Below, in pieces: positions 4,020 through 62,942 of a DNA stretch of 64,000 bases. This DNA is from Octopus sinensis. Lineage: Eukaryota. Positions within the stretch are counted from its first letter, which is position 1, and the number at the start of each line of letters is the position of its first letter. The stretch spans positions 38,316,001 through 38,380,000 of the forward strand of contig NC_043004.1 of assembly GCF_006345805.1 (NCBI RefSeq), read 5' to 3'. The position numbers were made by a program, and so were the translations under genes. Below the pieces are notes generated by a model. It saw nothing but the letters and a program-made list of their open reading frames with translations, was not told the origin of the DNA and made no database searches.

Positions 4020-4762
4020 GGGGGCAGTCGATTAGACTGACCCCATTATGCAACTGGTACTTAATTTACTGACCTCGAAAGAATGAAAGTCAAAGCCGAC
4101 CTCGGCGGAATTTGAACTCAGAACGTAAAGGCAGACGATATATCGCTTAGCATTTCGCCCGGCGTGATAACGTTTTTTATTTATTTATTGCCCACAAGGA
4201 GCTAAACATAGAGGGAACAAATAAGGACAGACAAAGGGATTAAGTCGATTACATCGATCCCAGTGCGTAACTGGTACTTAATTTATCGACCCCGAAAGGA
4301 TGAAAGGCAAAGTCGACCTCGGCGGAATTTGAACTCAGAACGTAACGGCAGACGAAATACCTATTTCTTTACTACCCACAAGGGGCTAAACACAGAGCGG
4401 ACAAACAAGGACAGATTATATCGACCCCAGTGCGTAACCGATACTTATTTAATCGACCCCGAAGGGATGAAAGGCGAAGTCGACCTCGGCGGAATTTGAA
4501 TTCAGAACGTAGCAGCAGACGAACTACTCATTTCTTTACCATCCACAAGGGGCTAAAAACAGAGAGGACAAACAAGGACTGACAAACGGATTAAGTCGAT
4601 TACACCGACCCATGTGCGTAATTGGTACTTAATTTATCGACTCCGAAAGGATGAAAGGCAAAGTCGACCTCGGCAGAATTTGAACTCAGAACGTAACGGC
4701 AGACGAAATATGGCTACGCATTTCGCCCGGCGTGCTAACGCTTCTGCCAGCTCGCCGCCTTA
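4020..4762 (-). mobile_element. Tandem multimer of tRNA-derived SINE family 1 (octopus OK-like)
   Basis: Repeated units of about 170 bp contain gaaaggatgaaaggcaaagtcgacctcggcggaatttgaactcagaacgtaac (B-box GAGTTCAAATTCC on the minus strand). The head aggcggcgagctggcagaa lies at the right end. The family name comes from recall and was not searched. Confidence 0.8.
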
Positions 4763-5175: not shown

Positions 5176-5504
5176 TATTGCTGCTGACTACATAATTGTT
5201 CATGTTGACAATAGAATTGCTTTCACTGTTGTTGCCGTTGACTGCATTATTGCTGTCGTTGTTCTTTTGAAAGTATTATAACTTGTCATTGTTCTCATTG
5301 ACAATACAATTGCTGTTATTGTTGTTACTGACAATATCAATGCTATTGATGATGCCGACAGCATAACGGCTGTCATTGTTGTCTTCGAAAGTATTGTTGT
5401 TGTTATTTACTTTGCTATTGTTATTGTAGTTGTTGACAGTATGTCTTTTGTCGTCGTTGCTGTTGTTGACAGCATTATTATCGTTGTTGTTGTTCGGATT
5501 ACTC

Positions 5505-5717
5505 TTTACTCTTTTACTCTTTTACTTGTTTCAGTCATTTGACTGCGGCCATGCTGGAGCACCGCCTTTAGTCGAGCAAATCGACCCCGGGACTTATTCT
5601 TTGTAAGCCCAGTACTTATTCTATCGACCTCTTTTGCCGAACCGCTATGTGACGGGAACGTAAACACACCAGCATCGGTTGTCAAGCAATGCTAGGGGGA
5701 CAAACACAGACATACAA

Positions 5718-5748
<31 letters not shown>

Positions 5749-6136
5749 CATATATATACGACAAGCTTCTTTCAGTTTCCGTCTACCAAATCCACTCACA
5801 AGGCATTGGTCAGCCCGGGGCTATAGCAGAAGACACTTGCCCAAGATGCCACGCAGTGGGACTGAACCCGGAACCATGTGGTTGGTTAGCAAGCTACTTA
5901 CCACACAGCCACTCCTGCGCCTACTGCTGTATTTGTTACTCTCTTTTACTCTTTTACTCTTTTACTTGTTTCAGTCATTTGACTGTGGCCGTGCTGGAGC
6001 ACCACCTTTTTAGTCGAGCAAATCGACCTCAGGACTTATTCTTTGTAAGCCTAGTACTTATTCTATCAGTCTCTTTTGCCGAACCGCATCGGTTTTCGAG
6101 CGATGTTGTGGGGGGGGGGCAAACACAGACATACAA

Positions 6137-9945: not shown

Positions 9946-10188
9946 AAATTGTCAATAACCATTATAATTTATGCGTCTCGAAACAAGCCGATAGAAATTT
10001 CTAAAAAATTCGTTATTACCGTATTGGTCCCAGTTTCGGAGTTAATTCATAAGAAATTTCCCCTCTTCAGCGATAAATACGTAAGACATAAATGAAATAC
10101 TTACTCATACCCATGGAAAAGGCAATCACTTAGAAATTTCTATCGGCTTGTTTCGAGACGCATAAATTATAATGGTTATTGACAATTT
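9946..10188. repeat. 59-bp perfect inverted repeat with 125-bp spacer
   Basis: 9946-10004 (aaattgtcaataacc...gaaatttctaa) is the exact reverse complement of 10130-10188. Confidence 0.9.
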
Positions 10189-13050: not shown

Positions 13051-13979
13051 TATTATTATTATTATTATTTATGGTTTCTTTTCATTATAACTTTATTTCA
13101 GCTGCCTTAGTACCGGGCATCCTCCGAAGGCCAAGAGTAGCAAGGGCACTTTTGTTTTGCTATGTATGCTAAAATTATCACCACATTTATTCCATTTTAG
13201 ATGGAGTGTGCTTTCCGTAGTATATGGGCTGTACCCATCAGGGAGATTGAAGTTACCAGGGAGTTGCTTAATATGCTTGTATTGGGAAGTTCCAAACGAT
13301 AGTGACGCCCTCGCCATTTACTACATCCTCTGGATGGTGCCTATACCACTTATCATGGAATTTAATTTTGTAGTATTTGCAAGCATTCCAGTGGATGTAC
13401 TGCCCTAATCTATCATGTCTTATGAGGTACTCCCTTTCAGCGAGGACTGGGCAGCCCGAAACAACATGATCAATTGTCTCGGTGAATTTTCCGCAAATTC
13501 TGCATAAGGGGTCAGATCCATTTTTAAGGACGTTTGCATGGTAGTTTCTGGTAGGTAAGCTCTGATCTTGCGCTGCAGTAACAAAACCTCCTGTTTACCC
13601 TTTCTCACCTGTCCCTTGTAGCCAGTGATGTGTTAGGATCTGGCTTGGACAGGCGGTTAGGGTATTCTCCATGCAGGAATTTGCCTTTCCAGTTGTCTTC
13701 GATATTATTCATGTAAGCCTTCTTTGCGTTTTGTTTGATGTTCTTTGCATCAGTGATGGGTTTGTCACTAATTGGATCTCATTGGTCTTTCTAAATATTA
13801 ATTTCTAAATCAGGTCTGTCAGTATTTAGGTGTCTTTGGTCATTCTTATTGTTAACTTGTAGGTCAAGAGACTTTTTAAATTTCTTACTAAGCTTCATGA
13901 CTGAAGCTTGCTTGGAATCTTCATGCATCAGGGCAGTTCGCAAGAGCACATCACTTGTTGTATTAAGGTACGTTTCAAG
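12762..13979 (-). mobile_element. R4/Dong-clade LINE 3' fragment, internally deleted, with duplicated 3' end
   Basis: The minus strand translates as CRICGKFTETIDHVVSGCPVLAEREYLIRHDRLGQYIHWNACKYY..KWYRHHP..VWNFP and then jumps to SLMGTAHILRK. The last ~230 bp is present twice (12762-12990 and 13068-13295), each copy ending in (AAT)n. Confidence 0.8.
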
Positions 13980-14323
13980 GTATAGATGCATCCATGGATC
14001 ATTGTTCTGCCAATGTAGCTTTCAACAGATTGGAACATATATGTTGTGGTTCATCAAACCTCACTAGAATATCAATATATGACGTTTACTGCGGGGCAGC
14101 TAGAATGAATATAATCAAGGATCTTTGCTGCGATTGTGTTGTAAAAGCAATTTCTGATACTTTTCCAACAGGATCTAATCTCATACCAGGCAGGTATGCT
14201 TGCTGTGGGAGTACAATTTTCGACACGCGTGCTCGAACCTGTTTCAACAAACAAATATATTCACCACTGAATGTTGTGCCATGGTGGCCGATGTATCATC
14301 ATCATCACCACCATCCTCACTGA
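13980..14323 (+). pseudogene. Galaxin-like exon 2, 5'-truncated copy A
   Basis: The open frame reads GIDASMDHCSANVAFNRLEHICCG...CC...[22 protein letters not shown]...VVPWWPMYHHHHHHPH*. It is collinear with 29199-29553, and the 3' UTR and AATAAA signals (14343, 14366) are also homologous. Its 5' end abuts the Dong fragment. Confidence 0.8.
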
Positions 14324-15479: not shown

Positions 15480-18459
15480 GTAGTAGTTTATTTGATGAGA
15501 AACATATGGATGATCTAAAAGAAGACAATAAAACTAATGGTGACATGGCAGAAGAAGAAAATGCAATCTACGACAGAATAATGGCAAGACTACAGGAGAA
15601 AGATAGCGACATTATTTGCAACCTTAAAAAGTTGATCGACGGAAATTAAACCAAGAAAGGAAAAATGTCAATGAAATTCTGAAATACATCAGAACAAACA
15701 ACATCACAGAAACAAATAATTTGATCAAAGCAGCAAGGATTGTTATAGCAGAAAACGTGGGTGTTGATGTCAAGAAAAAGAAACATAATGGGAGTGACAT
15801 GGTGGAAAAGAAGAATCCAGGCAGGGTTAGACAATCTCTCGAATGAAATCTGTGTTAGACCGAAAAGAGAAAGGTGAGCTTAAAAGCGAGTAAAAATACA
15901 GGGCGAAAGTAGTAGTGGAGGAACTGAAACAGCGCCTCATTACAAAGAAAGCAAAGCTGGTAAGATACGACCAAAGAATGAAAGGTTACCACCAGAATAG
16001 GTTATTCAGAGTAGATCGAAAGATATTCTATAAAGAAATGAATGGAGAGTGTACAGATGAAAAGTTGATACCAGATAACATTGAAAGTCAAAGGTTTCGG
16101 AGTGACATCTGGAGCAAAGATAAGGAGCACAAGAAGGATGCTAAATGGTTGCAAGAAATGGAACAAACAGTAGCCAGTCCAAAACAGGCAAAACTAGTAA
16201 TTTCAGTAAGGAAAGTGAAGGAAATCAGAAAAAAATGGGCAAATGGAAGGCCCAGGGACCAGATGGAGTTCAAGGCTACTGGATCAATAGATTTGGTGAA
16301 TGCCATGCACGAATAGCTGCACAACTCAAAACTCTGTTAAATGCCGACCAAGTAACACCAGAGTGGTTGACATTGGGTAGGAAAGTGCTGTGCCTGAAAA
16401 ACATCGAAAAAGGCAATACAGTAGACAATTACAGGCCGATATCCTGTTTGACAGTTATGTGGAAGTTATTGACTGGAATAGTCGCAGAGTCAATGTACGA
16501 ACACCTGTAAAAAAAACTGGAATCCTGCCACATGAGCGGAAGATTTGCAAGCGTAAGTTCAGAGGTACCAAGGATCAACTCCTGATTGACAAAACTGTAC
16601 TTAGAGACTGCAAGAGGAGGAAAAGTAAATTAGCCATGTCATGGATCGACTATCGTAAGGCGTACAATATGATCCCACATTCTTGGATTATGGAGTGTAT
16701 GGACCTATTTGGTAGTGCATCAAATGTTGAGCGCTTGCTTGGAAAAAGTATAGCGAATTGGAGGATGGACCTGACAGCATACGGATGAAGTTAAGGCACA
16801 GTAGAAATTAGGAGGGGCATCTTCCAGAGGGACTGCTTGTACTCACTGATCTTTGTATTGTGCTTGATACCACTAACACTGATTTTGAGGAAAGCAAAAG
16901 CTAGTTATGTATTCAAAAACCGCCAACTACAAATCAACCATTTGTTATTCATGGATTACCTCAAACTTTATGATAGAGATGAAACCCAAGTCAGCTCCCT
17001 CGTTGATACGGTGTATACCTTCAGTGCTGATATCAGAATGGAGTTCGGACTGAGAAAGTGTGGTGTGTTGAAGAGACGCAAAATCAAATGTATGGACAGG
17101 CTAACGATACCGTCGGGGAGGTTATGAAGCAGATCGAAGAGACGGGCAATAAGTACTTTGGGATTTTAGAAATGGATAAATTAATGGAGAAAGAAATGAC
17201 AGAGAAAAATGGAGTACTTGCGCAGACTGAGTCGAAATTAAACGGAGGGAATAAGATCGAAGCTATCAACACCTGGGCGGTTTCACTCTTTAGATATGAA
17301 GCATGGGTAATCGCATGGACACTATACGAACTAAACAGCTTAGACAGAAAGACAAGGAAGTTGCTGACTAGGTATGGGTCACTCCACCCCAAAAGTGACA
17401 CAAACAGACTGTATGTACCAAGAAAAAGAAGAGGAAGAGGACTTGTTGGATGCGAACACAGCATTAGAGCAGAAGAAAACAACATAACATAATATGTAAA
17501 AAATATGCCACAGAACCACTATTATTAGAAGTAGGAAGGTCAAGCTTTTGTAGGATGAAAGATTGCAAAGAGAAAGCACTATACAAGAAACTGAAAACGA
17601 ATGAAACTGAAAATAGGTGGGCAAAGAAAAGAGTGCATAGACAACTTCATAGGGATGGTGAAGATAAGACAGACAGAGAAAAGAGATGGCTGTGGATGAC
17701 TAAAAGTGATTTAAAACCGGAAACAGAGGCTCTAATCTGTGCTGCCCAAAAGCAAGCACTAAGAACAAACTACATAAAATACAGAATAGATAACATAGCC
17801 GAAAGTAATAAGTGCAGAATCTGTGGACAAAACTATGAAACCGTATGGCATAATACCAGCCAATATACGCCACTAGCCCAGAAGGAATATAAGAGACGCC
17901 ACGACAATATAGCCAGGCTTGTCCATTGGACACTTTCCAACAAGTATGGACTTGACAGAGCAAAAAATTGGTACGACCACAAACCTGAAGGCATCTTCGA
18001 AAGTAGAAAGGCAAAAATACAAAGGGATTTTATGATTCAGTGCAACCATGAGGCAGAGAATAGGAAGCTGGATATAGTCTTAATTAAGAAAGAAAACAAA
18101 CTATGCTGGATCATAGATATAGCATGCCCAGCTGACAACAAGGTATGCGATAAGGAAGAAAGAAAAGCCGAGAGACATGACAGGTTAGCTTGGGAGGTAA
18201 AGCAGTTGTGGCCGATGAAAAAGGTAGCAGTAGTATGAATAATTGTCGGAGCCCTGGGAACTGTGAGCAAAAATCTCGAGACGTACCTGGAACAAATAGT
18301 GGCTGCAATAAGGGTGAAGCACTTGCAAAAAACAGCACTGCTTGGAACCGCTCGAATACTCTGGAAGGTGCTCGAAAAATAAGAGGAGCTACCTTAGTTC
18401 ACTGGTAGTGAACAGCTGATACTGTAGTACATCTTCAGCGTTAGAAGCTGTGGAAAGGC

Positions 18460-18507: not shown

Positions 18508-18544
18508 CATGATAATCCTTACTAATATAGGCACTAGTCAATTT

Positions 18545-18880
18545 CATCAACCCCAGTGTTTTATTGGTACTTGATTTTATCGACCACGAAAGGATGAAAG
18601 ACAAAGTCGACTTCGGCGGAATTTAAATTTAGTACCTAGCAACAGACGAATTACCTATTTCTTTACAAAGGACTAAACACAGAGAGGACAAACAAGGACA
18701 GACAAACGGATTAAGTCGATTATATCAACCCCTGTGCGTAACTGGCACTTATTTAATCGACCCCGAAAGGATGAAAGGCAAAGTTGACCACGGCGCAATT
18801 TGAACTCTCAACATAACGGCAGACGAATTAGCGCTAAGCATTTCACCCGGCGTGCTAAAGATTCTGCAAGCGCACCTTAT
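18545..18880 (-). mobile_element. SINE family 1 dimer
   Basis: Two gaaaggatgaaag.caaagt.gac units followed by the head region gcatttcacccggcgtgctaa. Confidence 0.75.
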
Positions 18881-20092: not shown

Positions 20093-20186
20093 ATGTCCAA
20101 CATTGTAATCATCATTGCAGCTGCTCTGCTTGCAGTCTTTGGATCAACAACTGCCTTTCATTGGACATATAATGCTCCTCCACCTA
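20093..20186 (+). CDS. Galaxin-like gene B, exon 1 (signal peptide)
   Basis: MSNIVIIIAAALLAVFGSTTA/FHWTYNAPPP has a hydrophobic core and a T-x-A cleavage site, with ATG context aacatcATG. The donor GTAAGA at 20187 follows 94 nt (phase 1). The paralog at 61077 has the same layout and phase. Confidence 0.8.
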
Positions 20187-21278: not shown

Positions 21279-21297
21279 GTATGTATATATATTTGCG

Positions 21298-21512
21298 CGA
21301 GCTGGCAGAAACGTTAGCACGCTGGGCGAAATGCGTAGCTGTATTTCGTCTGCAGTTACGTTCTGAGTTCAAATTCCGCCGAAGTCGACTTTGCCTTTCA
21401 TCCTTTCGGGGTCGATAAATTAAGTACCAGTTACGCACTGGGGTCGACGTAATCCGTTTGTCTGTCCTAATTTGTCCCCTCTGTGTGTAGCCCCTTGTGG
21501 GTAGTAAAGAAA
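21298..21512 (+). mobile_element. SINE family 1
   Basis: gcgagctggcagaaacgttagcacg...gagttcaaattccgccgaagtcgactttgcctttcatcc...gccccttgtgggtagtaaagaaa. Confidence 0.85.
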
Positions 21513-21923
21513 TATATATATTTGCGCACGTACACGCGCGTGCGTGTATACTTAGATACACACGAGAAGAAATCGCGCTACAAGAAACAAACAGCAACGC
21601 ATAATCTTTGCAACTGGCACATGCTTTTAACTTTTAATTACCATTTACCGTTCTCTTTTTCCTAATCCTGACTATCTGAATTTATATTTGTATGTTCATG
21701 TTAAATTCTATTGATGTTTTGTCGATACATTGATGCATTTGAACGATTGGAAATATGCAGTTATAATATTATTGGAGACTTTTTCGTTTTTTATTGTTTT
21801 CTGTTTTCTGTTTAAATATGGATAAACACTCAGTCTTCTCGTGTTTGCATCTTATGAGTACGATAAATTTATAGCTACAGTTGTTTATGTTGAGAATGTA
21901 GAGTACTGTGAAAGTCTCATTTG

Positions 21924-21984: not shown

Positions 21985-23348
21985 TATATAAGTAAAACTC
22001 AAAGTTTGTTTTCCTGCCCTTTGATTAAGATGATAAAGAATACAAATAAAATAGTCATTTCCTCCCTTTAAGTAAAAAGAATCAAGTTGAAAATATTTAT
22101 TTGCGGAGGTATACATGAAAGAGTCGTCACAGCTACCGCCGTCCGTCCATTTTTCTTTGTTTTTTTTCGTTAATAATATATACAACTTTTGGAATGCCGT
22201 GGACTGCAAGATAGAAATTTGCCCTATATTTTATGAGATATATCTTGGATCCGGGGTACTTGATTTGTTTTCTTAAAGGGTTGTATGTTATAATGAAACT
22301 CTTTAAAGAGCATTCAAATGCCACTGCAGCGTTGAAATCGTTGCCCCAGTGAGGTCAATTAAGCACGTCATCAAGTACACGTTGGGTATGCTGAAGTACC
22401 CGTGTATGTCACTTGGAACAGCAGTAACAAAGAATGGCAGAGAAGAAAGCGAGGAAAAATACTGAAGCCATTTGAACGTTTTCAAAGAGGAAACACTTGG
22501 TTGTGTTTATATCGACACACAAAAGGCAGGGGAACTGTATTATTTAAGAATTTTATTGCATGAAGTTCGAAATTGACTCGAAACGCCAAAAACATTTCCA
22601 TTCGTCTGAAGCATCAAACTAATACACTTGCTTCTTCCCTCACCTGTCTTTGTCTTTTGTTATTTTTAAATTTTGGCTTTAGCAATATTCGAAGCCGTGA
22701 GAAAGTCATTCACTGAATTTTGTCATGGAGAAAATTTGTCACTATAGACAGATTGGTGTAAACACACCAATTCAGTTAGCAGTGATTCTTAACCAAACAG
22801 GCCTTTTTATGGGTTCGAATATGCGTCAAGCATATTGAACTGATAAAAAGTTTGTATTCATAAAGATCACTGCCCAGCGCTTTTATATCATCGAGCAAAT
22901 GTGGGCGGAACTCTTGAAGAGTTGTGGGAGCTCAACCACAGAGAATCGCGTCTCATACCTGTGAATGTGATGACTAATTAGTACGCATCTCTCCCCAGGC
23001 ACATTGAAACGATTATGAGAAACCACCCGAAATATTAACAATGTACAGTAACTTCTTGAAATGAACATTATGTAATAAATTTTCATTATAGACATTTTTA
23101 TTTCAAAACACTTTATCGTTTGGATTATGTGAGTGACCGAACTTTTGCACGGCCATTTTTGGTGGCCGTTTCGTTTATTCTCCTCTCATTCAGAACCCCT
23201 TTTACAAAATGTAATGATTAGGTATGGAAATGACTCCAACAGGACCAATGTTTCATCTGTAAAAAAAATGCAATGCGAGAAATTTAATTATAGGTTGGGA
23301 ATTAGTAGAAATTTACAATAGTTTAAAGTGGCCGATGACTTTTGCTCG

Positions 23349-23400
<52 letters not shown>

Positions 23401-23830
23401 CAAAACAAAAAATGGAACAAGAACGTAACAGGCGACAACAAAACATACGCAGAGTAGGTGATACAATAACGGACAGGAAAAAACAAGGACGGGACATTCG
23501 GAGTTTTCAATCTTCAGTCGAGAAGCAGATCGTCTTTGCAGGTTCGGTCGGTTAATTTTGAGACTGTTCTAATCTGGTCGGCTCCAAGCAAATCTAAGCT
23601 AAGAGCACTAGATTCTTTGGAAGAAAGCAAGAGAATGTATACGAAAACAAGGATGAAAAGCAAAAAACGGAGAAATGGTAAACAAATTCAGACCACAGGA
23701 CATTAACAACAGGTGTCTTTTGACTAAGGACGAATTCATGAATGGTTCATATCATTATTAGTATTCCTTTGTTATTCTTAAATCTAACCAAAATCAATAT
23801 TCTTTTTTGTTATTTTATTTCTGCATTTAG

Positions 23831-24249
23831 ATATTTTTAATCAGGCTTTAAACGCTCTGCTCGCTGTGGAAATGTAGGATTTGGTAGAGAGGCGAAATTT
23901 TGTTGCGCAGGTCCATTACTTCCAAGAACAACCGCAACAAACGGCTGTTGCAGCGCGGAATCGATAGAGACATCAGTTAGCGATTGTTGTAACGGCGCTT
24001 CGATTGCGCGAACGACGCATGTACACTGTGGCACAGCACCAATTCTCAGGGAAACAATATTGGGACGGTCACAATGGATGCACGAAGTTTCTTTGTTGTT
24101 AGGGCACTGTAGCGCATATTCTGGGTAGAAATAATAATATAGCACACATATTTGCTTGCTGTGTATTTTTAATGTTCTGTTACTTTGGGCGCGTGTATCT
24201 ACGACGGAGTTGGGTGCCATGGTGGCAGATGTGGTATCATTTATTTTAA
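23831..24249 (+). pseudogene. Galaxin-like exon 2, diverged intronic copy C (frameshift and stop)
   Basis: The frame from 23841 reads SGFKRSARCGNVGFGREAKFCCAGPLLPRTTATNGCCSAESIETSVSDCCNG...MHEV and aligns residue for residue with [50 protein letters not shown] of exon 2B. After a shift near 24090 it reads CC*GTV...FACCV...SWVPWWQMWYHLF* (TAG at 24100, TAA at 24247). Candidate acceptors are catttag (23830) and ttaatcag (23844). Confidence 0.8.
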
Positions 24250-25566
24250 AACCGGTATCGATTAACAAATTCCATTAGCATGTAAAACATATTTTGTCTG
24301 TTCAATTTTGCTTTGCATAAAATATATACTCTTCTTTTGTATAGTCATTAAACAAGGTTAATATCAGAAAACACTCAAAGACTATATGCCTTGTTGACCC
24401 CGATTTTAGTTTTGGGCATATTTTTCAGAAACTGGATATCATGTATTGTAATCATTCTTTGTAAAAATTGGTTATAGAAATGAACAAAAAGCATTCTGTA
24501 ACTTATTGGTAGATTTGAAAACCAGCGATGGCCTCATTTTTATGTCGTCAATTCAAGCGAAGCATGCTCAGTTCAGCAAATTGTCGAGTAAATACAAATA
24601 TATAGCTATGAACTCTATGGTACATATTCTGAGAGAGATGGTTAGTTAACCTATGGACGAAATCCTTAATTCTCAAACTATGAACCTGTTAGGCAAGTGT
24701 ATAAATGCCTACGAAATATATATTTATTTCATACGATACTTTTCGCGAAAATTTGTAATAGTTTAAAGATTTAATATAAATATACCATAGTTTTGTATGT
24801 ATTTAAAATGAACAGTGACATATAGACTTTATCTCTAATTCAATATTCTGTATGAAAATTCTTCCAATGCCAAGTTACTTTCAGACGAAGATCCGTGTGA
24901 TTAACTTGCTAGAAATAAAGGCTAAATCTTCCCTCAAATTACAGCATACCCTCTTAAAATGAAACATATTAATGTATTCCTAGAAAAGCCTGTTCAGGAA
25001 CATATTATGCTCATGAGCATTGTACTATTTCCAAGACAAGCGATGTCGACTTGATTAGCGTTCGACTCTGACGGTTATGGAAAATAGACGTGTTAATGTG
25101 CAGTTCCAGAGCGTTATAATTGTTGGAGGGAATAATATAGTGTAATGATGGATGATTCATTAACACAATATGGATAAATAGTTGAGAGGATTTTATTGAG
25201 TCTTGACTGCTTGAGTGGAGGTAACCCGAGACCAGTAAACTCCGGGGAGCAAGGACAATAATAGAAGAGGTGGGATAGGGCACAATAAGAGACAGCGACT
25301 CTGTGAATCAGAAGTTATAGTATGCCAAACCCTCTACAAATGACAGCAAATCCGACTTAAATCACAAACTCCTATTTAAATAGAAAACATCGCACATTGT
25401 AATCGAACCAGCAACAGCTTCAACAATTAAACAGCAATGTATTCTACAGGCGAATATTATAGATACACGTATTTTATAGATACATATATTGCCTAGTAGA
25501 GTTATAAAAATTTTGTAGAGTGGAGAGACGCATTAGGTTTTTAAGTTAATCAACTTACATTTAGAT

Positions 25567-27819: not shown

Positions 27820-28390
27820 AGAAGTAGTGTTGTTGATGAAGGGGCAGGTGTTGCAGTGGGATCTGCAGCACGGGTAGGATCCGGGTGGGGCTGGTGGAAA
27901 GAGGAGAAGGTGCTACGGACCAGAAGATCTCGTAAGTTCCGGGCGCGTGTAAAGGAGGACAAGGGTGAGTTGGGGAAAATTGGGCGGGTAGTAGGATCGA
28001 GCTGGAGGCGATGGAAGGCTCGTAGTGTCCTTCGACGAAGGGGTTGAGTGAAGAGTGGAAAAGGAGGGGAAGGGGTTCGGTTAGTGGGTGGGTGAGGGGA
28101 AGAAGAAACTATGGTGGTGCGATCCATTCGACGAGCGCGGGCAAGTGTGTTTTGGACATAGTTTGAGGTGTATCCTCGATGCCGGAACAGGCGGGCAAGG
28201 TACTGGGATTGAATCTCAAAATCCTGGTCCTGGATGCACAAGCATCGGATGCGGAGGAACTGGGAGTATCGGCTGGCCCGTTTGGTGTGGAAGGGATGGG
28301 AGGAGGAGAAGTTGAGGTAAACGTGAGAATCTGTGGGATTGAAGAAGGCGGAGGCGATGAGAGAGTGGGAGGGATGGTCAATCGTAAGAG
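27820..28390 (-). mobile_element. Penelope-like element fragment (RT C-terminal region)
   Basis: The minus ORF segment reads NPTDSHVYLNFSSSHP..YSQFLRIRCLC..YLARLFRHRGY. It belongs to the same family as 47330-48200. Confidence 0.8.
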
Positions 28391-28393
28391 AGA

Positions 28394-28570
28394 TGGTATT
28401 TCGTCTGCCGTTACGTTCTGAGTTCAAATTCCGCCGAGGTCGACTTTGCCTTTCATCCTTTCGGGGTCGATTAAATAAGTTACGCACTGGGGTCGATGTA
28501 ATCGACTTAACCCGTTTGTCTGTCCTTGTTTGTCCATTTGTGTTTAGCCCCTTTTGGGTAGTAAAGAAAT

Positions 28571-28572
<2 letters not shown>
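28394..28572 (+). mobile_element. SINE family 1
   Basis: gtatttcgtctgccgttacgttctgagttcaaattccgccgaggtcgactttgcc...gtagtaaagaaatag. Confidence 0.85.
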
Positions 28573-28620
<48 letters not shown>

Positions 28621-29009
28621 GTGTGTATATATATATGTGTGTGTGTGTGTAAATATATACACATATATTAATGAATGAGAGTATTGTATTCAAAAAGGCA
28701 GCATTCCAGCAGAATCATTAGGAAGCCGGACAAAATGCTCAGTAACGTTTCCTCAGTTTTTGCAATCTGGTTTCATATTCTACTATGGTCGAATTTCTCT
28801 TTTTCCTTTTCAGTCTCGATAAAATACATACAAGTCAAATGTGTCTATAATAGTAATAATTTTTAAAAATATTTATATGCCTATAATCCTGTATATTCTA
28901 TATTTTTTATATTCATATATAATACTTGTACAATTTTTTATACACATGCATTGTCATTTGTATTTAATATTTAAATTAAATTGATTTTTAATATCTGATT
29001 CATTTTTAG

Positions 29010-29553
29010 AGTATTGCGGTAACCAATTGTACAACCCTCACAATAGCATTTGCTGCCAAGGACAACTGACAGCTATAAGTGGTTTCATGTATCCTGCTTG
29101 TTGTGGAGTTGCAGGATTTGACAGAGATGCCAAAGTATGTTGCAACGGAAATCTCGTTAGTAAATCAGCAGGAGTAAATGGATGTTGCGCTGGGGCAGGT
29201 ATAGATATATCCATCAAAGATTGCTGTCCCAGCGGACCTGTTGACAGAGTGGATTACTTATGTTGTGGTGGGCCAAAATTAGTAGAACATCAATATATGA
29301 CGTTTGCTGCGGGGGAGCTAAAATGAATAAGATGACGGAAGTTTGCTGCAATGGTGTTGTAACATCAATTTCTGATACTTTTCCAACAGGATCTAATCTC
29401 ATACCAGGCAGGTATGCTTGTTGTGGGAGTACAGTTTACGACACTCGTACTCGTACCTGTTTCAACCAGCATTTAAATACACAAAATAATTTGGTGCCAT
29501 GGTGGATGATGAATTATTTTCATCATCCCCCTCATCACCACCATTTTCACTGA
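29010..29553 (+). CDS. Galaxin-like gene B, exon 2 (nine CC repeats, VPWW, His-rich tail), with an apparent 1-nt deletion near 29270-29278
   Basis: The acceptor catttttag at 29009 gives A+AG=Lys in phase with exon 1. The exon reads [15 protein letters not shown]...LCCGGP, shifts frame, then continues [12 protein letters not shown]...[18 protein letters not shown]...[20 protein letters not shown]. Copy A is continuous across the shift. AATAAA signals lie at 29573 and 29596. Confidence 0.8.
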
Positions 29554-29744
29554 TTGGTAACTGATATGACAAAATAAAGTTTTGAAGCATGTAAGAATAA
29601 ACCGCTTGTTTTGTTTGTTTTATATAGAAGACGTATTCAAACATTTCTCTCTTCGCTTTGTCTGTCAGTTTCCGCTCTCTCACTATCTCCATATATATGT
29701 AGATATGTGCATATGTATATATATATATATATGTAGATATGTGC

Positions 29745-30299: not shown

Positions 30300-31275
30300 T
30301 TTTCTTGTTTCAGCTCAGAGCTGCGGCCATGCTGATGCACCGTCGTTTTGTGCTACACTGTTATTACGAAGAACGTCCTCTAATATGTGGCACTTGGTGA
30401 AGAATGGAGTTTGATATAGCTACTCTCATTTGCACCTCTTGCCGTGAGGTAGGTTCATCTGGGACTCTCGACAGGAAGATGTCCAGCTTTGATTTAAAAA
30501 CCTCTACTTTGTGCAAGTTTCTCAGACTCTTTGGGAGAATATTAAAAAGCTGTGGGCCCTTGAAACCCAGGCTGTTGCAGAAGCTGGTCCTGAAGCGTGA
30601 TAGCATTGCTGGGATCTTTGTCACTATGCAGTGTCGTCCCGTTCTAGCATTGGTGTAGCTTACAATGCCAAAATTTGGCACAATTCCTTCCAGGATCTTC
30701 CAGACATATATTACTGCCTACCTCTCCCGTCTTCTCTGCAGGGAGTAGAGATTTAGCTGTTTCAACCTTTCCCAGTAGCTGAGCTGTTGCAAAGGGACGA
30801 TCTTCTTTGTGAATCTTCTCTGGATTGCTTCAAGGTCCGCTGTTAATTTTACACTGGTGGGTGACCATAGCTGTGAACAGTAATCCAGGCGGCTGAAGAC
30901 GAATGTCCGCCAGAGGATCATCATGGTTTCCTTATCTCTGGTTCTGAATGTTCTTAGGATTCATCCAGCCAGTCGTCTGCACTTTGTCGCCATCCTGGTA
31001 ATGTGCACTTCGAAAGAGTTATCATCACTCATGTCGATACCCAGGTCCCTCACAGACTTAGGCTCTGGGATTGAAATTCCGTGTGGACCGGTGTATTCTG
31101 TAAGTTTAATATTCAGTTTTGGATGCTGGTAGCGCAGGGCCTGGAATTTTTCAGCATTAACCTGCATATTATTATCCACAGCCCATCTGTAGATTGAGTC
31201 CAACTCCTGCTGCAGGTGTGCAACATCGCTGGGGTTCTGTATTTTCTGCGAGACTTTCGTATCGTCTGCATAGCT
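30300..31275 (-). mobile_element. CR1/L2-group LINE family A, 5'-truncated
   Basis: Minus-strand pieces read [36 protein letters not shown] and FKGPQLFNILP. The 3' tail at 30304-30342 resembles the SINE family 2 tail. Confidence 0.85.
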
Positions 31276-31320
31276 TATACATACATACATACATACATTC
31301 ATACATACATACATACATAA

Positions 31321-31426
<106 letters not shown>

Positions 31427-31525
31427 AAGCTATGCAGACGATACAAAAGTCTCGCATATATATAGACAGACAGACAGACAGTCAGACAGATAGACAGACA
31501 GACAGATAGACAGATAGATAGATAG

Positions 31526-31575
<50 letters not shown>

Positions 31576-31794
31576 GTAGGTAGGTCTACAGTATTTCAAA
31601 CCCTAGCAGTATATTCAATAACTTTATCCACATAACTACCACCATATCTACTCACTTGTATTCCTCTTACAGTCAACCTTTACCTTGCAGAATTGGTCCC
31701 GCGTAAAGACCTCGGTGTCTAAGTTCAATACCTTTGAGGGTACCAAAAATTCTCTATACCGAGAATATCTGGATCTCATCTGTTTACTGCATAT

Positions 31795-41469: not shown

Positions 41470-44400
41470 TTTCGAATAGTACCGAAATGGAAGAGTTACT
41501 GAAAGCAGTTGTAAAACAACAACAGCAGCAACTACATATGTTAACAGAATTATTACTGCAGTCGAGAAATACGATAGAATCATTTTCAGCATATGGTGTT
41601 GCAAATCCCATCGAAGAATTTCACTACAATCCGGATAAAGGAACTACTTTTGCTACATATTACAGACGATACGAAGACATATTCCGAGAGACATGTGAGG
41701 GATGAACTAGTGAAAGGAAGGTAAGACTCCTTTTGCGAAAGCTTGCTACTCCGGAACACGAAAGATTTTGTAACTTTATTTAGCCGAAAAAGCCCGCGGA
41801 ATTGTGTTTTGATGAAACGATAAATATTTTGACTAATATTTTTAGCGAGAAAAGTTTGCAGTTTAACATTCGATGGGAATGTTTAAATTTAAAGAAAAAC
41901 GAGTCGACGATTTTGTAACATATACCGGTATGGTTAATAAGGCTCGCGAAAGGTTTAAGCTGGAAGAATTAACGCCAGATATGTTCAAGTGCCTAATATT
42001 CTTTAAAGGGCTAGTGGCAACGGAAGATGCGGAAATTAGAAAAAGAATATTATCAAAGTTGAATCAAGATGTGTAACTCACTTTGCAGAATGTGGCTGAG
42101 GAATGCCAACAAATAAACCTTCGAGATGATACAAGAAAGATAGAAGACAAGAATAATAATGTACAAATGTGTAAAGAAAGTACAGAAAGAAGGAAAAATT
42201 TAAATTCAAAACGGTGCTAGGTTGTGGAGATCGACATTTGAGGAAAGATTGCCCCTTTAAAAATAAAACCTGTTTTAAGTGTGGCAAAACTGGACATATA
42301 CAGACGAAATGCCGGTCAAAGAAAATGGTAAAACAGATGAAAGTCTACTCAACAAAAGTAAATTATACCAGACAAAACCGAAAATTTGTGTTGGTAGAAA
42401 TAAATGGGTTTCAGACCAAAATGCAATTAGATGCCGGTTCAGACGTATCGATAATAAATACGGCAACATAGAGTAAGATAGGCAGGCCGCTGTATAAAAT
42501 AAACTACTAGGATAGCCTACCGTGTGTTAGGGGAACGAGTTTTAAACTTGGGCGAAATTTCACCAGAAATAAAACTTAAAAACAGGAAGCGGAAATGTAA
42601 ACTTATGGTATCTAAGAATACAATGAATCTCTTTGAGACAGATTTAATGGAAGGATTCGACCCGTGGGATCTATCACTGAATACATTATGTAACAAGGTG
42701 AATGCGTCACAGTCCGTGTCAGAGAAAGCATCGGAAAAAATAAAATTAAAATTGAAAAAGATGTACCCTGATATTTTTTCGAAAGTGTTCGGTATGTGTA
42801 AAAAAATTAAAGTAAAGTTTGAGTTGAAAGAAAATGCGGTGCCGGTGTTCAAACCGAAAAGGAATGTACCTTTTGCGGCATTAAACCAAGTTAAGAAGGA
42901 AGTAAAAAGATTGGAAGACATGAAAGTAATTGAAAAAGTAGACTACTCTGAGTGGGCGGCTCCTACGGTATATATAAAAAAGAACAACGAGGTAAGAGTA
43001 TGTGCGGACTATTCAACTGGTCTTAATGATTATTTAAAAAATTACAATTATTCGCTTCCAAAACCAGAGGAAATATTAGCTAAGTGCAATGGTGGGAAAT
43101 TTTTTCCAAGCTGGATTTGTCAGAGGCCTACCTCCAAGGATGGTAGATGAAGAATGTGCTAAAGTATTAACAATCAATACTCATAAAGATCTGTACCGTT
43201 TCAAAAGACTGCCATTTGGGGTAAATGTCGCACCAGCAATATTTCAGCAAGTGATGGATACTATGCTAGCAGATTGTGAGTTCGCGGTCCCATACTTGGA
43301 TGACATATTGATCAAAAGTGAATCAAGGGACCAACATATTGAACACATAGAAAAGGTTTTCAAACGAATATGTGATTACGGGTTCAAAGTAAGGGAGGAT
43401 AAATGTGAATTTTTCTTGACAAAAATAAAGCACTTAGGAGAGGTGATCGATAAAAACGGACGAAAGCAGGACCCTTCTATGATCGACGCGATAAAAAAAT
43501 GCCTGCTCCCACTAACAAAACAGCAATTCCAGCATTCTTAGGTTTGGTAAGTTATTACCAGTTGTACATACCTAAAATGTATGAGCTAAGAGCTCCGTTG
43601 AATAAGTTGCTAAAGAAGGACTCGAAATGGAGCTGGACAAACGAATGTCAGAAATCATTCGAGGAATTAAAAAAGCGGTTAATATCAGAGTTATCATTAA
43701 CTCATTTCGACCCAAACCTGAAAATAATTGTGGCAACGGATGCCAGTGAATATGGTAGAGGAGCTGTGATATTGCATAAATTTAATGATGGTATCATCAA
43801 AGCTATTGCACATGCATCGAGAGTTCTATTGCCAGCGGAAAAAGAGTCGTTATCATTAATCTTCGCAGTAAAAAAATTCCATAAATTCTTACATGGGAGG
43901 AAGTTTACACTGCAAACGGATCACCGACCGTTATTGTCTATTTGTGGTTCGAAAAAGGGTATTCCAACTCACTCAGCAAATCGCTTACAGCGCTGGGGGA
44001 CTACACTGTTGAACTACGATTTCCAGATGGAGTTTTTGCCATCAATGAAAATGGGACATGCAGACGGGTTGTTTAGGCTAATTCCAAAATATGATGAACC
44101 TTTTGAGGACACGGTGATTGCATCGTTAAAACTAGAAATGGAACTGAAGAAAATTTTGTGCAATGTAGTACGTGATTTGCCGGTAACACTAGAAGAAATT
44201 AAATTGAAATCGAGAAATGATAGGTTCATAAATAAGATTTAAAAAATGTTGAGTAACACGAAAAATATAAATGAGCGGGACGCAGGTTCAAAGCACTATT
44301 CAGTGTGTGATGAGGTATTATTATATGCACAAAGAGTGGTAATACCTGAAGCAATGCAAAACAGAGTATTAAAAGACTTTCATGTAGGACATCCGGGGAA

Positions 44401-44699: not shown

Positions 44700-46590
44700 T
44701 TAAAGCATTTCTTAAAAAAGTTAAATTTCTCAAACCTTACTCACAAGCTGTAAAATGTACACCAACATTTCAATCTTATATTCACCGAGATTACGGAAAC
44801 AATAATGGTTATTAGGAGATATTTAGCCAACATAGCAGTCCCACTTAATAAACCCAAAGCCTCTCGTCTTTTAGACTGAATATTTCCATAACTGAAGATC
44901 CCAACATACATAAAGGAATTGGAAATGTGACCAGAATCGGCTGCAATCTGTACCTAACAACGAACTCACTTCATAAATTTTAATATCTGAGAAATTGTTA
45001 ACGACTACGGAAGCTCTGAAAAATAGTTAAATTTAAAATATCTTTTGACCTAGTAAACCCCAACACTCTATGGTGCAAACCTAATGTAACAAACCGAAGA
45101 TAATTGACCTTTGATATAAAAGCTTTGAACACAGACAAGTTCAAGTCTTCAGATAAAAGTTTGAAGTGCACTCCAGCAACACAATACCTTGCTTCAATGA
45201 AATATGTGTCGATATGTTTCTCTTTTGTACAATATTACGTCTTACGTCTAATAGAAGTATTATACGATTACGAAAACTGTGGACGAATAACATGAAATAA
45301 AACAAATACAACTCAACAAAAGCTAAGAGTAAAGCATTGAACAAATTCAATAATTTTGCAACTGCATTCCCACATCATGTAATAGCACACTATGAACCGA
45401 AATGTAACACCAGCAGAAAGGAATAGGAAATATTCATGACCTTCAAACAAGAATGATATCATAAAGAAAGGAATAAGGGTCAATAAGGATCTGAATACTA
45501 CAGTTACACCAAAATAATTCCCACAAGAAACCTATTATGAAATGGTAATTAAACAAGCACCGAAATCAATGGAGAAATTTAGCATCTTCATTTCTCTACT
45601 CCGAAAGTGATAAATAAACGAGAGACGGAAACGAACATTGAATGCAACATAGGCAATCTATACGGACTCCTACAAGCTGCCAGAATGTAAAACTTTACAC
45701 GAATCAACTTCAACATCATTAATCATGCTACGCACTACAATCTTAACTTGACTGCAGCGGGCCCAATCAGTGAAACAAGCAGACTGTGAAATTTCGTAAA
45801 TATTCAACTGAAACTCATTCTGAAACACATAGCGAACCTTTAAAATGATTTTGATCTTTTAAACCACCTTGTGAAAAAAGTTAAATACATTTATATTCTT
45901 TTTTAGCATAAGTTATTACTGTATCGTTAAATTCAGTCAAAATCCTCCTCTCTGCTCAATCATAAAAAAAAACATACACAGAAATTGAGAACTACATCGA
46001 TTCCAAACCAACAGACTCTTGCTAATACTTAGTATTTGCTTCTTGTCTCCTGGCCAAAACAGATTTATTGTTTAGTAATAGCATGAAGAATATGTCCAAT
46101 AGTTTTGAATTCTAAAACATAGAATTAAAACGAGTATTACTTGAAAGACAGTATCCAACAAGGTTAATTGTTAACAGACGAAAACGTGCCAAAGCAAGTG
46201 ACATTCAAAGAAGATGAGGAAGGAAGACAATTCAACTTAACAATACTCTACATTATAACACAACACACAACGCAAGAAATTAAGAAACGTAAAATACTAT
46301 CCATAAATACATTCCTTTATTGAAGTAAAACCAACAGTGAAAATGTCTCTCGAAATACAAAAAACAATCAAATGTAAAAGAAAAAAACTAGTAATATTAT
46401 TTACTCAACTGAAATTACCCGCAAAAAAAAAAAAATAATAGAAAAACAAAAATATGTGTACCAATAGTCAAAATGTGTGATCAGCTTAACAGTTGTACAG
46501 ACATCTTATAAATGTAAAGCAGATCATATTTTCGCTGTAAAAAAAATCACGTCATCACGTTTGTCAAATGTATTAATTTCTGACATTAAA
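44700..46590 (+). mobile_element. Highly decayed Penelope-like element
   Basis: Near 45980-46170 it translates as YIDSKPTDSC*YLVFASC...RICPIV...LKRVLLERQYPTRLI, matching the PLE RT C-terminal pattern KPTxxxxYLxxxSxHP. Boundaries are approximate. Confidence 0.55.
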
Positions 46591-46592
46591 TA

Positions 46593-47017
46593 TTATCTTT
46601 TCTTATTTCTTTATTGCCCACATGGGGCTAAACATAGACAGGACAAACAAGAATAGACAAACGGATTAAGTCGATTACATCGACCCCAGTGCGTAAATGG
46701 TACTTAATTTATCGACCCCGAAACGATGAAAGGCAAAGTCGACCTCGGCGGAATTTGAAATCAGAACGTAACGGCAGACGAAATACCTACTTCTTTACTA
46801 CCCACAAGGGGCTAAACAGAGAGAACAAACAAGGACAGACAAACGGATTAAGTCAATTATATCGACCCCAGTGCGTGACTGGTACTTATTAAATTGACCC
46901 CGAATTGATGAAAGGCAAAGTCGACCTCGGCGGAATTTGAACTCAGAACGTAACGGCAGACCAAATACGGCTACGCATTTCGCCCGACGTGCAAACGTTT
47001 CTGCCAGCTCGCCGCCT
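46593..47017 (-). mobile_element. SINE family 1 dimer with 12-bp TSD
   Basis: Two body units and a head are flanked by TGACATTAAATA at 46581-46592 and 47018-47029. Confidence 0.85.
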
Positions 47018-51250: not shown

Positions 51251-51307
51251 GGCTCCTTTGTATACTCCGATCCTTTCTTTATGTATATGTATATATATAT
51301 ATATATA

Positions 51308-51856: not shown

Positions 51857-51907
<51 letters not shown>

Positions 51908-52942: not shown

Positions 52943-52997
<55 letters not shown>

Positions 52998-61801: not shown

Positions 61802-62942
61802 ATCTTATACTAACCTCAAAGTTTGTCTGCTTTCCTGCTCTTTGATTACGATGACAAAGGTTACAAATAAAATAGTCATTTCCTCCTTTAAGAAAAGGAG
61901 GAAATGATTTTTGAGGAAATAATATGGCGTAATGATGAATGGTTTATAAAGACGATATGGATAAAAGGAAGAGAGGATTTTATTGAGTCTTGAATGCTTG
62001 ACAGAAAATCCAACCTAAATCACTTTTAAACAGAAAACGTTGAACATTGTAATCGCACTAACAACAATTGCAACAATTAAACAGCAAAGTATTCTACGGG
62101 CACAAATTATAGATACACATATTTTTAGATACATATATTGCCTCCTATAGTTATAGAAATTTGTAGAGTCGAGAAACGCATTAGGTTTTTAGGTTATTTA
62201 TCATACGTGTAGATTAACACCCACTAGATTTAAATTTGCTTTTCAACTATGTAAAGGCAATGGAATGTCAGTTGTTGTTTATCTCATTGTAATGCAAGAT
62301 GGTGGGGCATTTCAGTAGTGGCTGTTCGTCATTTTCTTATATTTAAGTCTACAGTCTCCAATAAATTATATTTAATAAAAGCGAAATCATTTGAAAGAGT
62401 TTACTGATATTTTTGTAGGTAGAATGACTAAAAAGAAAATGCTCTCGCTTTGCTTAGTAATGTATAAATTTTGTTTAAAGTGATGATAAAATCTCCACTA
62501 TAAATACGAGAAATTAATGTTAATACAATAATTTAGGCACAATATGGTAGAAGCTTAATTTATATAAAGTGATATGCAATGAAACATTTTGAAGGTAAGA
62601 TAAAGCGCATGATTGAAGTCTGGTCAGAGAAAAAGCGAATCTCCATAACATCGTATCCCGGAAATGCCAGTTAAGTTCCGAGCAATCGCTGTCGACCTCG
62701 CTGTTGACGAAAAAGAGGATCATAAATATATTCTCAGAGAGACTACCCGAATGCATCCATGCAATTAAGCACACTTTCACACAGTATGATAAAAACAAAA
62801 ACCTAACCGATGCAGACTAAACACTAAAAATATATACTCCGACCTTTTGAATCCACCGCCCCAACCTCATCGAGTGACAACTTCATTTACAATAGACCTG
62901 AAACCTATACATCGGAAGAACCGAATGAGAATAATAGAACGT

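What the first reader, a model, noticed from the sequence alone, without database searches (positions are those of the whole stretch)
23831..24249. A second, diverged galaxin-type exon inside the intron with a phase-compatible acceptor: possible alternative terminal exon
Seen: a + strand frame not listed in the ORF track aligns codon for codon with exon 2B and ends in VPWW. The acceptor ttaatcag/gc at 23844 is phase 1, so exon 1 could splice to it and give about 125 aa with three CC motifs and no His tail (stop at 24126). The ancestral frame has a shift near 24090 and a TAG at 24100. The segment 22085-25140 that holds it is absent from the collinear intron of paralog D. Inference: it is either a dead duplicated exon or one signal-peptide exon choosing between alternative mature-domain exons.
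Basis: partly seen in the sequence, partly recalled or inferred. Interest (0 to 1): 0.7.

Follow-up and report, generated by a model that had tools for sequence, protein, structure and literature searches.

The report
Dead alternative galaxin exon in octopus
The intron of an Octopus sinensis galaxin gene holds the decayed remains of a second mature-protein exon; a neighbouring paralog still has an intact copy that RefSeq annotates as an alternative last exon, but the copy here drifts like the surrounding intron.

Summary
Window 23831-24249 (+) is a galaxin-type exon (Pfam Galaxin_repeat, 32.4 bits against a cut-off of 28).

The window is Octopus sinensis CM016866.1:38316001-38380000.

The exon is a relic:
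- The same exon sits at the same intron position in the O. bimaculoides ortholog and in its galaxin-2 gene.
- The ortholog shares a frameshifting 13-nt deletion, the TAG at 24100, a 12-nt deletion and a Cys-to-Tyr change.
- Since the species split it has diverged at the intron rate (92.3% identity against 91.7-92.6% in the flanks; 4 synonymous and 14 non-synonymous changes, omega 1.09).
- The "phase-compatible acceptor" at 23844 is the junction of a 58-nt deletion specific to O. sinensis. It lies 14 nt downstream of the stronger ancestral AG.
- The poly(A) signal is mutated (AATAAA to AACAAA).
- Paralog D lost the segment by deletion; it was not inserted into B.

About 100 kb downstream, a paralog keeps an intact copy of this proximal exon. 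RefSeq annotates exon 1 + proximal (X1, 221 aa) and exon 1 + distal (X2, 216 aa).

The result is a decayed exon of a known kind, of modest interest.

The parts
20093..20186 (+). Exon 1 of galaxin gene B: start codon and signal peptide, with a phase-1 donor CTA|GTAAGA.
   Evidence: Sequence and translation. 77% aa identity to exon 1 of O. bimaculoides galaxin P0001.
23808..23830 (+). Ancestral 3' splice site of the proximal exon: a pyrimidine tract followed by ..gcatttAG. It is retained in all copies.
   Evidence: 78% pyrimidine at -20..-3, against 67% for the distal-exon acceptor of B at 29009. Almost identical in both O. bimaculoides copies and in the live O. sinensis exon.
23831..24249 (+). 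Decayed proximal mature-domain exon (pseudo-exon), from the ancestral acceptor to the ancestral stop TAA at 24247-24249.
   Evidence: Pfam Galaxin_repeat. Groups with intact proximal-type exons at bootstrap 100. Lesions listed. Divergence equals that of the intron.
23843..23844 (+). AG created by a 58-nt deletion specific to O. sinensis. The deletion removed the first CC motif and the position of the CAA-to-TAA stop seen in O. bimaculoides.
   Evidence: Alignments A3 and A5. An upstream AG lies at -14.
23862..23864 (+). CGC (Arg) replacing the first Cys of a CC motif. This loss is specific to the O. sinensis lineage.
   Evidence: Window ARCG against O. bimaculoides ACCG and live SCCG.
24050..24051 (+). 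Junction of a 13-nt frameshifting deletion that removes the YDVCC motif. Shared with the O. bimaculoides ortholog.
   Evidence: Alignment A5.
24078..24079 (+). Site of a further 1-nt deletion, found only in O. sinensis.
24100..24102 (+). TAG in the ancestral frame (GAG in the live exon). Shared with the O. bimaculoides ortholog.
24126..24128 (+). TAG that ends the 125-aa conceptual product (exon 1 joined to 23845).
24264..24269 (+). AACAAA, the mutated remnant of the proximal exon's AATAAA poly(A) signal.
   Evidence: AATAAA is kept in the live exon (L003) and in the O. bimaculoides galaxin-2 copy.
29010..29553 (+). Distal mature-domain exon of B, with a 1-nt deletion in the A-run 29275-29278. 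The spliced frame therefore stops at 29324-29326.
61897..61909 (+). Deletion junction in the intron of paralog D (the P0018 gene), where the segment holding the proximal exon was lost.
   Evidence: D's flanks match O. bimaculoides L002 53252-53369 and 57692-57783. The 4.3 kb between them holds that gene's copy of the exon.

Best explanation
Window 23831-24249 is the decayed proximal member of an old pair of alternative terminal exons.

Inferred history: in the ancestor of the Octopus galaxin genes, one signal-peptide exon was followed by two tandem exons. Each encoded a complete mature galaxin domain with its own stop codon and poly(A) signal. Choosing between the proximal and distal terminal exon gave two secreted proteins.

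Shown here: that layout is still intact, and annotated as isoforms X1 and X2, in a galaxin-2-like paralog about 100 kb downstream in the same O. sinensis array. In the galaxin gene of this window (B), the proximal exon was disabled before O. sinensis and O. bimaculoides split. Since then it has drifted like intron, and O. sinensis has added lesions of its own.

Inferred consequence: the 125-aa open frame from exon 1 through 23845 is an accidental by-product of a 58-nt deletion. Transcripts of B are expected to skip the relic and splice to 29010. Any residual use of the relic's acceptor region would mostly hit the upstream AG at 23830 and terminate after 15 codons.
For: 1. Source: the window is O. 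sinensis CM016866.1:38316001-38380000 (12924 of 12924 bases identical to L004). B is orthologous to the O. bimaculoides galaxin gene (intron about 92% identical).

2. Position: the same exon lies at the same intron position in the O. bimaculoides ortholog (L001 14979-15433) and in its galaxin-2 gene (L002 56526-56971).

3. Shared lesions with the ortholog: a 13-nt frameshifting deletion, GAG-to-TAG at 24100, a 12-nt deletion and a Cys-to-Tyr change in a CC motif. Both O. bimaculoides copies also share a CAA-to-TAA stop near the 5' end.

4. Neutral rate: 92.3% identity for 23845-24128, against 91.7% and 92.6% in the flanking intron. Nei-Gojobori counts are 4 synonymous and 14 non-synonymous (omega 1.09). 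Differences by codon position are 7/5/6.

5. O. sinensis-only lesions: the 58-nt deletion that creates the AG at 23843-23844, a Cys-to-Arg change, a 1-nt deletion, an 18-nt deletion and AATAAA-to-AACAAA.

6. Live homolog: L003 22897-23411 is intact. My in-silico splice of exon 1 to it equals XP_036361252.1 (X1, 221 aa) exactly, and exon 1 to the distal exon equals XP_036361253.1 (X2, 216 aa). The introns of B and L003 are collinear around the exon.

7. Tree: the three decayed copies and two intact proximal exons form a clade at bootstrap 100, apart from all distal exons.

8. No protein containing the exon was found: a search of 5.8e9 clusters gave nothing, the best match among 1.8e9 representatives was 37% identical, and the exact product is absent.

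9. Dispensable: paralog D lost the segment by deletion, and the P0017 gene has no copy.
Against: - No transcript data could be consulted, so use of either AG is unproven in both directions.
- The ancestral acceptor and its pyrimidine tract are fully preserved. Some splicing into the relic is therefore possible.
- Omega near 1 is not decisive on its own in this family, because the live distal exons also give omega about 0.95-1.18. The argument rests on the rate, the lost cysteines and the shared lesions.
- Paralogous decayed copies compared with each other show omega 0.38 and an excess of third-position changes (15/8/23 and 11/11/22). This hints that the exon stayed coding for a while after the gene duplication, which sits awkwardly with the TAA shared by the two O. 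bimaculoides copies. Gene conversion or CpG decay could explain it.
- The X1 isoform of the paralog is a RefSeq model. I could not see its RNA support.
Confidence: 0.88

Rival explanations
1. A revived alternative terminal exon. In O. sinensis the 58-nt deletion removed the 5' stop and created a phase-1 acceptor, so exon 1 now splices to 23845. The product would be a 125-aa secreted mini-galaxin with three CC motifs.
For: The frame is open for 93 codons and compatible with exon 1. Its translation still scores above the Pfam cut-off. The distal exon of B is frameshifted in this assembly, so this would be the only other long frame the gene offers.
Against: - The same frame is already open for 117 codons in O. 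bimaculoides, where no compatible acceptor exists. The openness is therefore inherited, not selected.
- Since the species split there have been 14 non-synonymous and 4 synonymous changes, one of which destroys a CC cysteine in the O. sinensis lineage.
- Identity equals that of the intron.
- A stronger AG lies 14 nt upstream.
- The poly(A) signal is mutated; only an ATTAAA at 24347 remains, and such hexamers occur about 1.9 times per kb in this intron.
- The product would have nine cysteines, an odd number.
- No such protein is in any collection searched.
Confidence: 0.04
2. A decoy 3' splice site. The preserved ancestral acceptor at 23830 still captures some B transcripts. These terminate after 15 codons or are degraded, which lowers output of the distal isoform.
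For: The acceptor has a 78% pyrimidine tract, stronger than the distal-exon acceptor (67%), and is nearly invariant among all copies. The 100 nt around it are 90% identical between paralogs, against about 82% for the rest of the intron.
Against: - Other 50-nt intron windows reach 90-94% identity between paralogs, so the acceptor region is not exceptional.
- Terminal-exon definition needs a poly(A) signal, and that is mutated here.
- D and the P0017 gene do without the segment.
- There is no excess conservation between the orthologs.
Confidence: 0.07
3. A recent insertion into the intron of B, such as a transposon-captured or segmentally copied galaxin exon. This would explain its absence from D.
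For: About 3 kb (22077-25122) present in B is missing from the collinear intron of D.
Against: The segment is present at the same junctions in the O. bimaculoides ortholog of B and in the O. bimaculoides locus orthologous to D's intron (L002 53370-57691). D therefore has a deletion. No terminal repeats or target-site duplication flank the segment; only (TA)n tracts were found.
Confidence: 0.01

Closest known systems
Octopus sinensis galaxin-2-like isoforms X1 and X2 (XP_036361252.1, XP_036361253.1), encoded at CM016866.1:38443210-38476936 in the same array
   Same: The layout is the same: signal-peptide exon, then a proximal mature-domain exon, then a distal mature-domain exon. The introns are collinear around the proximal exon. 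The proximal exon is the closest intact relative of the relic (55-64% aa identity, against 34-45% to distal exons; clade bootstrap 100).
   Different: There the proximal exon is intact: 170 codons, all CC motifs, and an AATAAA signal. Here it has a 58-nt 5' deletion, frameshifts, an in-frame TAG, two lost cysteines and a mutated poly(A) signal.
Alternative last exons that give different mature peptides from a shared signal or pro-region, such as calcitonin/CGRP from CALCA (from general knowledge, not tested here)
   Same: One 5' exon supplies the secretion signal. The choice of terminal exon, each with its own stop and poly(A) site, selects the mature product. This is the inferred ancestral mechanism for the family.
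   Different: In the galaxins the two terminal exons are tandem duplicates of each other and encode the same fold. In gene B the proximal choice no longer exists.
Decayed tandem exon duplicates (pseudo-exons) left in introns, a known outcome of exon duplication (general knowledge)
   Same: Recognisable homology to the neighbouring live exon, disabling lesions shared between species, and a neutral substitution rate.
   Different: Nothing essential. The unusual detail is that the relic (83% aa, 92% nt between the species) is better conserved than the live exons (57-76% aa), because the live ones diverge unusually fast.
Cephalopod galaxins EsGal1-10 of Euprymna scolopes, secreted di-cysteine-repeat proteins whose peptides have antimicrobial activity (PMC12773714)
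   Same: Signal peptide plus tandem CC repeats. The octopus galaxin-1 and galaxin-2 groups are placed beside the squid clades in that paper.
   Different: That work describes expression and peptide activity, not gene structure. It does not mention alternative terminal exons or decayed exons.

Membership tests
Galaxin-like repeat coding sequence (Pfam PF24748) | Profile match above the curated cut-off | tested here: met
   32.4 bits against a cut-off of 28, E = 1e-7, for the 23845-24125 translation.
Galaxin-like repeat coding sequence (Pfam PF24748) | Regular di-cysteine (CC) motifs along the whole domain | tested here: not met
   The intact proximal exon has nine Cys-Cys pairs (alignment). In the relic four pairs survive, counting both reading frames. 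One was deleted with the 58 nt, one with the 13 nt, one is now RC, one is now HC, and one lies in the deleted or garbled tail.
Galaxin-like repeat coding sequence (Pfam PF24748) | Uninterrupted reading frame over the domain | tested here: not met
   13-nt and 1-nt deletions, a TAG at 24100 in the ancestral frame, and a TAG at 24126 in the 5' frame.
Functional alternative terminal exon | A 3' splice site that puts the exon in frame with the upstream exon | tested here: inconclusive
   The ancestral AG (23830) gives a stop after 15 codons. The new AG (23844) is in phase, but it lies 14 nt downstream of that stronger AG and has a 61% pyrimidine tract. Actual usage needs RNA data.
Functional alternative terminal exon | Its own poly(A) signal downstream of the stop | tested here: not met
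   AATAAA in the live homolog is AACAAA here (24264-24269). Only an ATTAAA at 24347 remains, at the background frequency of the intron.
Functional alternative terminal exon | Constraint between species beyond that of the intron | tested here: not met
   92.3% identity against 91.7-92.6% in the flanks; omega 1.09; uniform distribution over codon positions.
Functional alternative terminal exon | Transcript or protein evidence | not testable with these tools
   No RNA-seq is available here. Indirectly, no protein model contains the exon.
Decayed exon duplicate (pseudo-exon) | Positional and sequence homology to a live exon | tested here: met
   Collinear with the live proximal exon of L003, and in the same clade at bootstrap 100.
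Decayed exon duplicate (pseudo-exon) | Disabling lesions fixed and shared across species | tested here: met
   The 13-nt deletion, the TAG, the 12-nt deletion and the Cys-to-Tyr change are shared with the O. bimaculoides ortholog.

The most novel reading that the evidence does not exclude
The 58-nt deletion revived part of a long-dead exon. O. sinensis would then make a lineage-specific 125-aa secreted mini-galaxin from exon 1 plus 23845-24125. It might compensate for the frameshifted distal exon of the same gene.
Probability: 0.04. Interest if true: 0.6.

Novelty: new member of a known kind. Interest (0 to 1): 0.3.

Why it matters
The relic itself matters little, but it is a useful marker. 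It shows that the pairing of one signal exon with two alternative mature-domain exons predates the split of the octopus galaxin, galaxin-2 and galaxin-2-like genes. It also shows that the proximal exon has been lost repeatedly: by decay in galaxin and galaxin-2, and by deletion in D.

Because it sits inside the gene, it also serves as a neutral yardstick. Against it, the live mature-domain exons of this candidate antimicrobial family diverge three to four times faster than intron, while their splice-site flanks and 3' UTRs stay 94-96% identical. That pattern is worth a proper test for diversifying selection or exon-targeted gene conversion.

For annotation, the 125-aa frame should not be called as an isoform without junction reads.

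Tried and rejected
- Insertion in B or transposon capture: rejected. The segment lies at the same junctions in two O. bimaculoides loci, and no terminal repeats were found.
- Extra conservation of the exon or its acceptor: none between orthologs. Between paralogs the acceptor region (90%) is matched by other intron windows.
- Internal cassette exon: the only in-phase donor candidate is CAG|GTCCAT at 23911, 66 nt from 23845. It matches only 6 of 9 consensus positions and lacks the A at +4 and the G at +5, so it was rejected as weak.
- Antisense ORF 23837-24268 (143 aa): no Pfam family. Indels between the copies mean a common antisense frame cannot be kept.
- Proteins containing the exon: none among 5.8e9 clusters, best 37% identity among 1.8e9 representatives, exact product absent.
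- The DNA for P0016 (a second intact proximal-type exon) is not on record, so no dN/dS could be computed for the live proximal exon.
- A second decayed copy around 22650-22960: only chance-level tblastn hits (E > 6) and one short two-copy repeat.
- Literature: no paper on octopus galaxin gene structure or isoforms was found.

Full report
**What is at the coordinates**

The window is AT-rich eukaryotic DNA. Exon 1 of a galaxin gene, here called B, runs from 20093 to 20186. It holds the start codon and the signal peptide MSNIVIIIAAALLAVFGSTTA, and ends in a phase-1 donor CTA|GTAAGA. The mature-domain exon of B runs from 29010 to 29553 behind the acceptor ttttAG.

Between them, 23831-24249 (+) is homologous to that exon:
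- Frame 3 of 23847-24125 reads FKRSARCGNVGFGREAKFCCAG...DCCNG...
- Frame 1 of the tail ends SWVPWWQMWYHLF*.
- tblastn inside the window gives E = 4e-12 to 4e-15.
- Pfam Galaxin_repeat gives 32.4 bits against a cut-off of 28.

Exon 1 joined to 23845 gives 125 aa with three CC motifs and stops at TAG 24126. A TAG lies at 24100 in the other frame.

**Where the window comes from**

The best protein relatives are octopus galaxins. Exon 1 of paralog D (61077-61230) is 100% identical to residues 1-51 of O. sinensis galaxin-2-like P0018. The locus fetched for that protein overlaps window 51077-64000 at 12924 of 12924 bases. The window is therefore Octopus sinensis CM016866.1:38316001-38380000.

B is the ortholog of the O. 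bimaculoides galaxin gene (P0001, locus L001). Their introns align end to end at about 92% identity.

**The exon is old and positionally conserved**

A homologous exon sits in the same intron position in two O. bimaculoides genes:
- the ortholog, at L001 14979-15433 (82-83% aa identity to the window copy);
- galaxin-2, at L002 56526-56971 (68-74% aa identity).

The 3-kb segment that D lacks is present, with the same left and right junctions, in B, in L001 and in L002. L002 is the locus orthologous to D's intron. D 61779-61896 matches L002 53252-53369, and D 61910-62001 matches L002 57692-57783. D therefore lost about 4.3 kb by deletion.

**It is dead, and died before the species split**

I aligned the three decayed copies to an intact homolog. 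Some lesions are shared and some are private.

Shared by B and its O. bimaculoides ortholog:
- a 13-nt frameshifting deletion that removes the YDVCC motif (junction 24050/24051);
- GAG-to-TAG at 24100;
- a 12-nt deletion (24116/24117);
- a TGC-to-TAC change (Cys to Tyr) in a CC motif, also shared with the galaxin-2 copy.

Shared by the two O. bimaculoides copies:
- CAA-to-TAA five codons into the exon.

Private to O. sinensis:
- a 58-nt deletion (23843/23844);
- TGC-to-CGC (Cys to Arg, 23862-23864);
- a 1-nt deletion (24078/24079);
- an 18-nt deletion (24174/24175);
- AATAAA-to-AACAAA in the poly(A) signal (24264-24269).

Private to O. bimaculoides:
- a SINE-like insertion in the 3' end of its copy (L001 15410-15780).

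**It evolves like intron**

Between the orthologs, 23845-24128 is 92.3% identical. The flanking intron is 91.7% identical upstream and 92.6% downstream. Over 76 ungapped codons there are 4 synonymous and 14 non-synonymous differences, which gives omega 1.09. The differences fall 7/5/6 over the three codon positions.

Omega alone is not decisive in this family. The live distal exons also give omega 0.95-1.18. What separates them is the rate. The live exon of B is only 74.5% identical to its ortholog (dS 0.32, dN 0.30), yet every CC motif is kept. The relic diverges at the intron rate and has lost cysteines.

**The phase-compatible acceptor is an accident**

The AG at 23843-23844 is made of the A of ..AATCA and the G of GGCTTT.., which the 58-nt deletion brought together. 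O. bimaculoides has no phase-1 AG in that region. The same frame is nevertheless open there for 117 codons, so the open frame is inherited and not maintained by selection.

The ancestral acceptor 14 nt upstream (..ttatttctgcatttAG|AT) has the better pyrimidine tract: 78% against 61%. Splicing at that upstream AG reads NIFNQALNALLAVEM and then stops.

A profile-free search with the relic returned an O. sinensis galaxin-2-like protein (P0004). Its locus, L003 (CM016866.1:38433210-38486936), carries two gene products that start at the same base. The locus holds:
- exon 1 at 10001-10151;
- an intact proximal exon at 22897-23411, with acceptor ctgcctttAG|AT, all CC motifs, the ending WVPWWQMWHH*, and an AATAAA downstream;
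- a distal exon at 43227-43727.

My in-silico splice of exon 1 to the proximal exon is letter for letter XP_036361252.1, 'galaxin-2-like isoform X1' (221 aa). Exon 1 to the distal exon is XP_036361253.1, 'isoform X2' (216 aa). A second intact proximal-type exon exists as P0016 (76% identical, all Cys kept).

In a neighbour-joining tree, the three decayed copies and the two intact proximal exons form a clade at bootstrap 100, apart from all distal exons. The introns of B and L003 are collinear on both sides of the exon.

The proximal/distal pair therefore predates the divergence of the galaxin, galaxin-2 and galaxin-2-like genes. It is kept in one gene, decayed in two, and deleted in D. It is also absent from the P0017 gene.

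**Mechanism**

Shown: the homology, the position, the lesions, the neutral rate, the origin of the AG, and an intact annotated homolog.

Inferred: the ancestor used one signal-peptide exon with a choice of two terminal exons, in the manner of calcitonin/CGRP. In B, transcripts now skip the relic. Any residual use of its acceptor is unproductive.

Not testable here: actual splice-junction usage, and RNA support for isoform X1.

**Loose ends**

- The paralogous decayed copies, compared with each other, give omega 0.38 and an excess of third-position changes. Control frames give 0.87-3.7. This suggests the exon stayed coding for some time after the gene duplication. That conflicts mildly with the TAA shared by the two O. 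bimaculoides copies. Gene conversion near the 5' end (90% identity there) or CpG decay could reconcile the two.
- The distal exon of B has a 1-nt deletion in an A-run, and neither the spliced B product nor any close relative from O. sinensis turned up in the protein collection. B may be a pseudogene as a whole, or the assembly may have a homopolymer error.

**Verdict**

The 'alternative terminal exon' reading is wrong for this copy. It is right for the ancestral architecture of the family and for a live paralog that RefSeq already annotates that way. Interest is modest.

Noticed in passing
window 29270-29330: The distal (main) exon of B has a 1-nt deletion in the A-run 29275-29278 relative to fragment A and both O. 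bimaculoides genes. The spliced frame therefore stops at 29324-29326 (136 aa), and the PWW/His tail is out of frame. Neither the spliced B product nor any close O. sinensis relative turned up in the protein collection. Either B is a pseudogene or the assembly has a homopolymer error.
   Followed up: partly
window 28960-29640 against L001 27600-28260 and L002 76660-77330: The live mature-domain coding sequence is hyperdivergent: 74.5% identity between orthologs, dS 0.32, dN 0.30, omega about 0.95. The 50 nt before the acceptor (96%), the 3' UTR (94%) and the intron (92%) are conserved. The dead exon (83% aa) is better conserved than the live ones (57-76% aa). The pattern resembles gene families with a hypervariable mature peptide. 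It could reflect diversifying selection or gene conversion.
   Followed up: partly
window 13979-14310: Fragment A is a 5'-truncated distal-type galaxin exon (3' half plus 3' UTR, ending VPWWPMYHHHHHHPH*). It lies about 6 kb upstream of exon 1 of B, has no exon 1 of its own within reach, and has lost cysteines (HCS, VYCG).
   Followed up: partly
window 61077-64000; L004: Paralog D is the O. sinensis galaxin-2-like gene (P0018, 235 aa), with a proline/tyrosine-rich extension in exon 1. Its intron lost the proximal-exon segment by a deletion of about 4.3 kb (junction 61897-61909).
   Followed up: yes
L003 4603-4749 and 10001-10150; L002 10001-10150 and 48848-48997: Both the live O. sinensis paralog and O. 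bimaculoides galaxin-2 have two tandem copies of the signal-peptide exon upstream of the mature-domain exons. These genes may therefore combine alternative first exons with alternative last exons.
   Followed up: no
L001 15410-15780; window 5503-5879 (-): A SINE-like element is inserted in the 3' end of the O. bimaculoides copy of the dead exon. A related copy (89% identity) lies elsewhere in the window.
   Followed up: no
window 21297-21514, 28381-28589, 4178-4755, 18541-18871, 46587-47012, 60446-60733 and others: A repeat family of about 200 nt has more than ten copies in the window at 77-89% identity. ARAGORN finds no tRNA-like head.
   Followed up: no
window 15915-18238 (+) and 30364-31599 (-): These are broken ORFs with weak reverse-transcriptase (RVT_1) and zf-RVT matches, all below the Pfam cut-offs. 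They look like decayed retroelement fragments flanking gene B.
   Followed up: partly
window 23837-24268 (-): A 143-codon open frame lies antisense to the dead exon. It has no Pfam match, and indels between the copies prevent a common frame. It is probably a by-product of the locally higher G+C content.
   Followed up: partly
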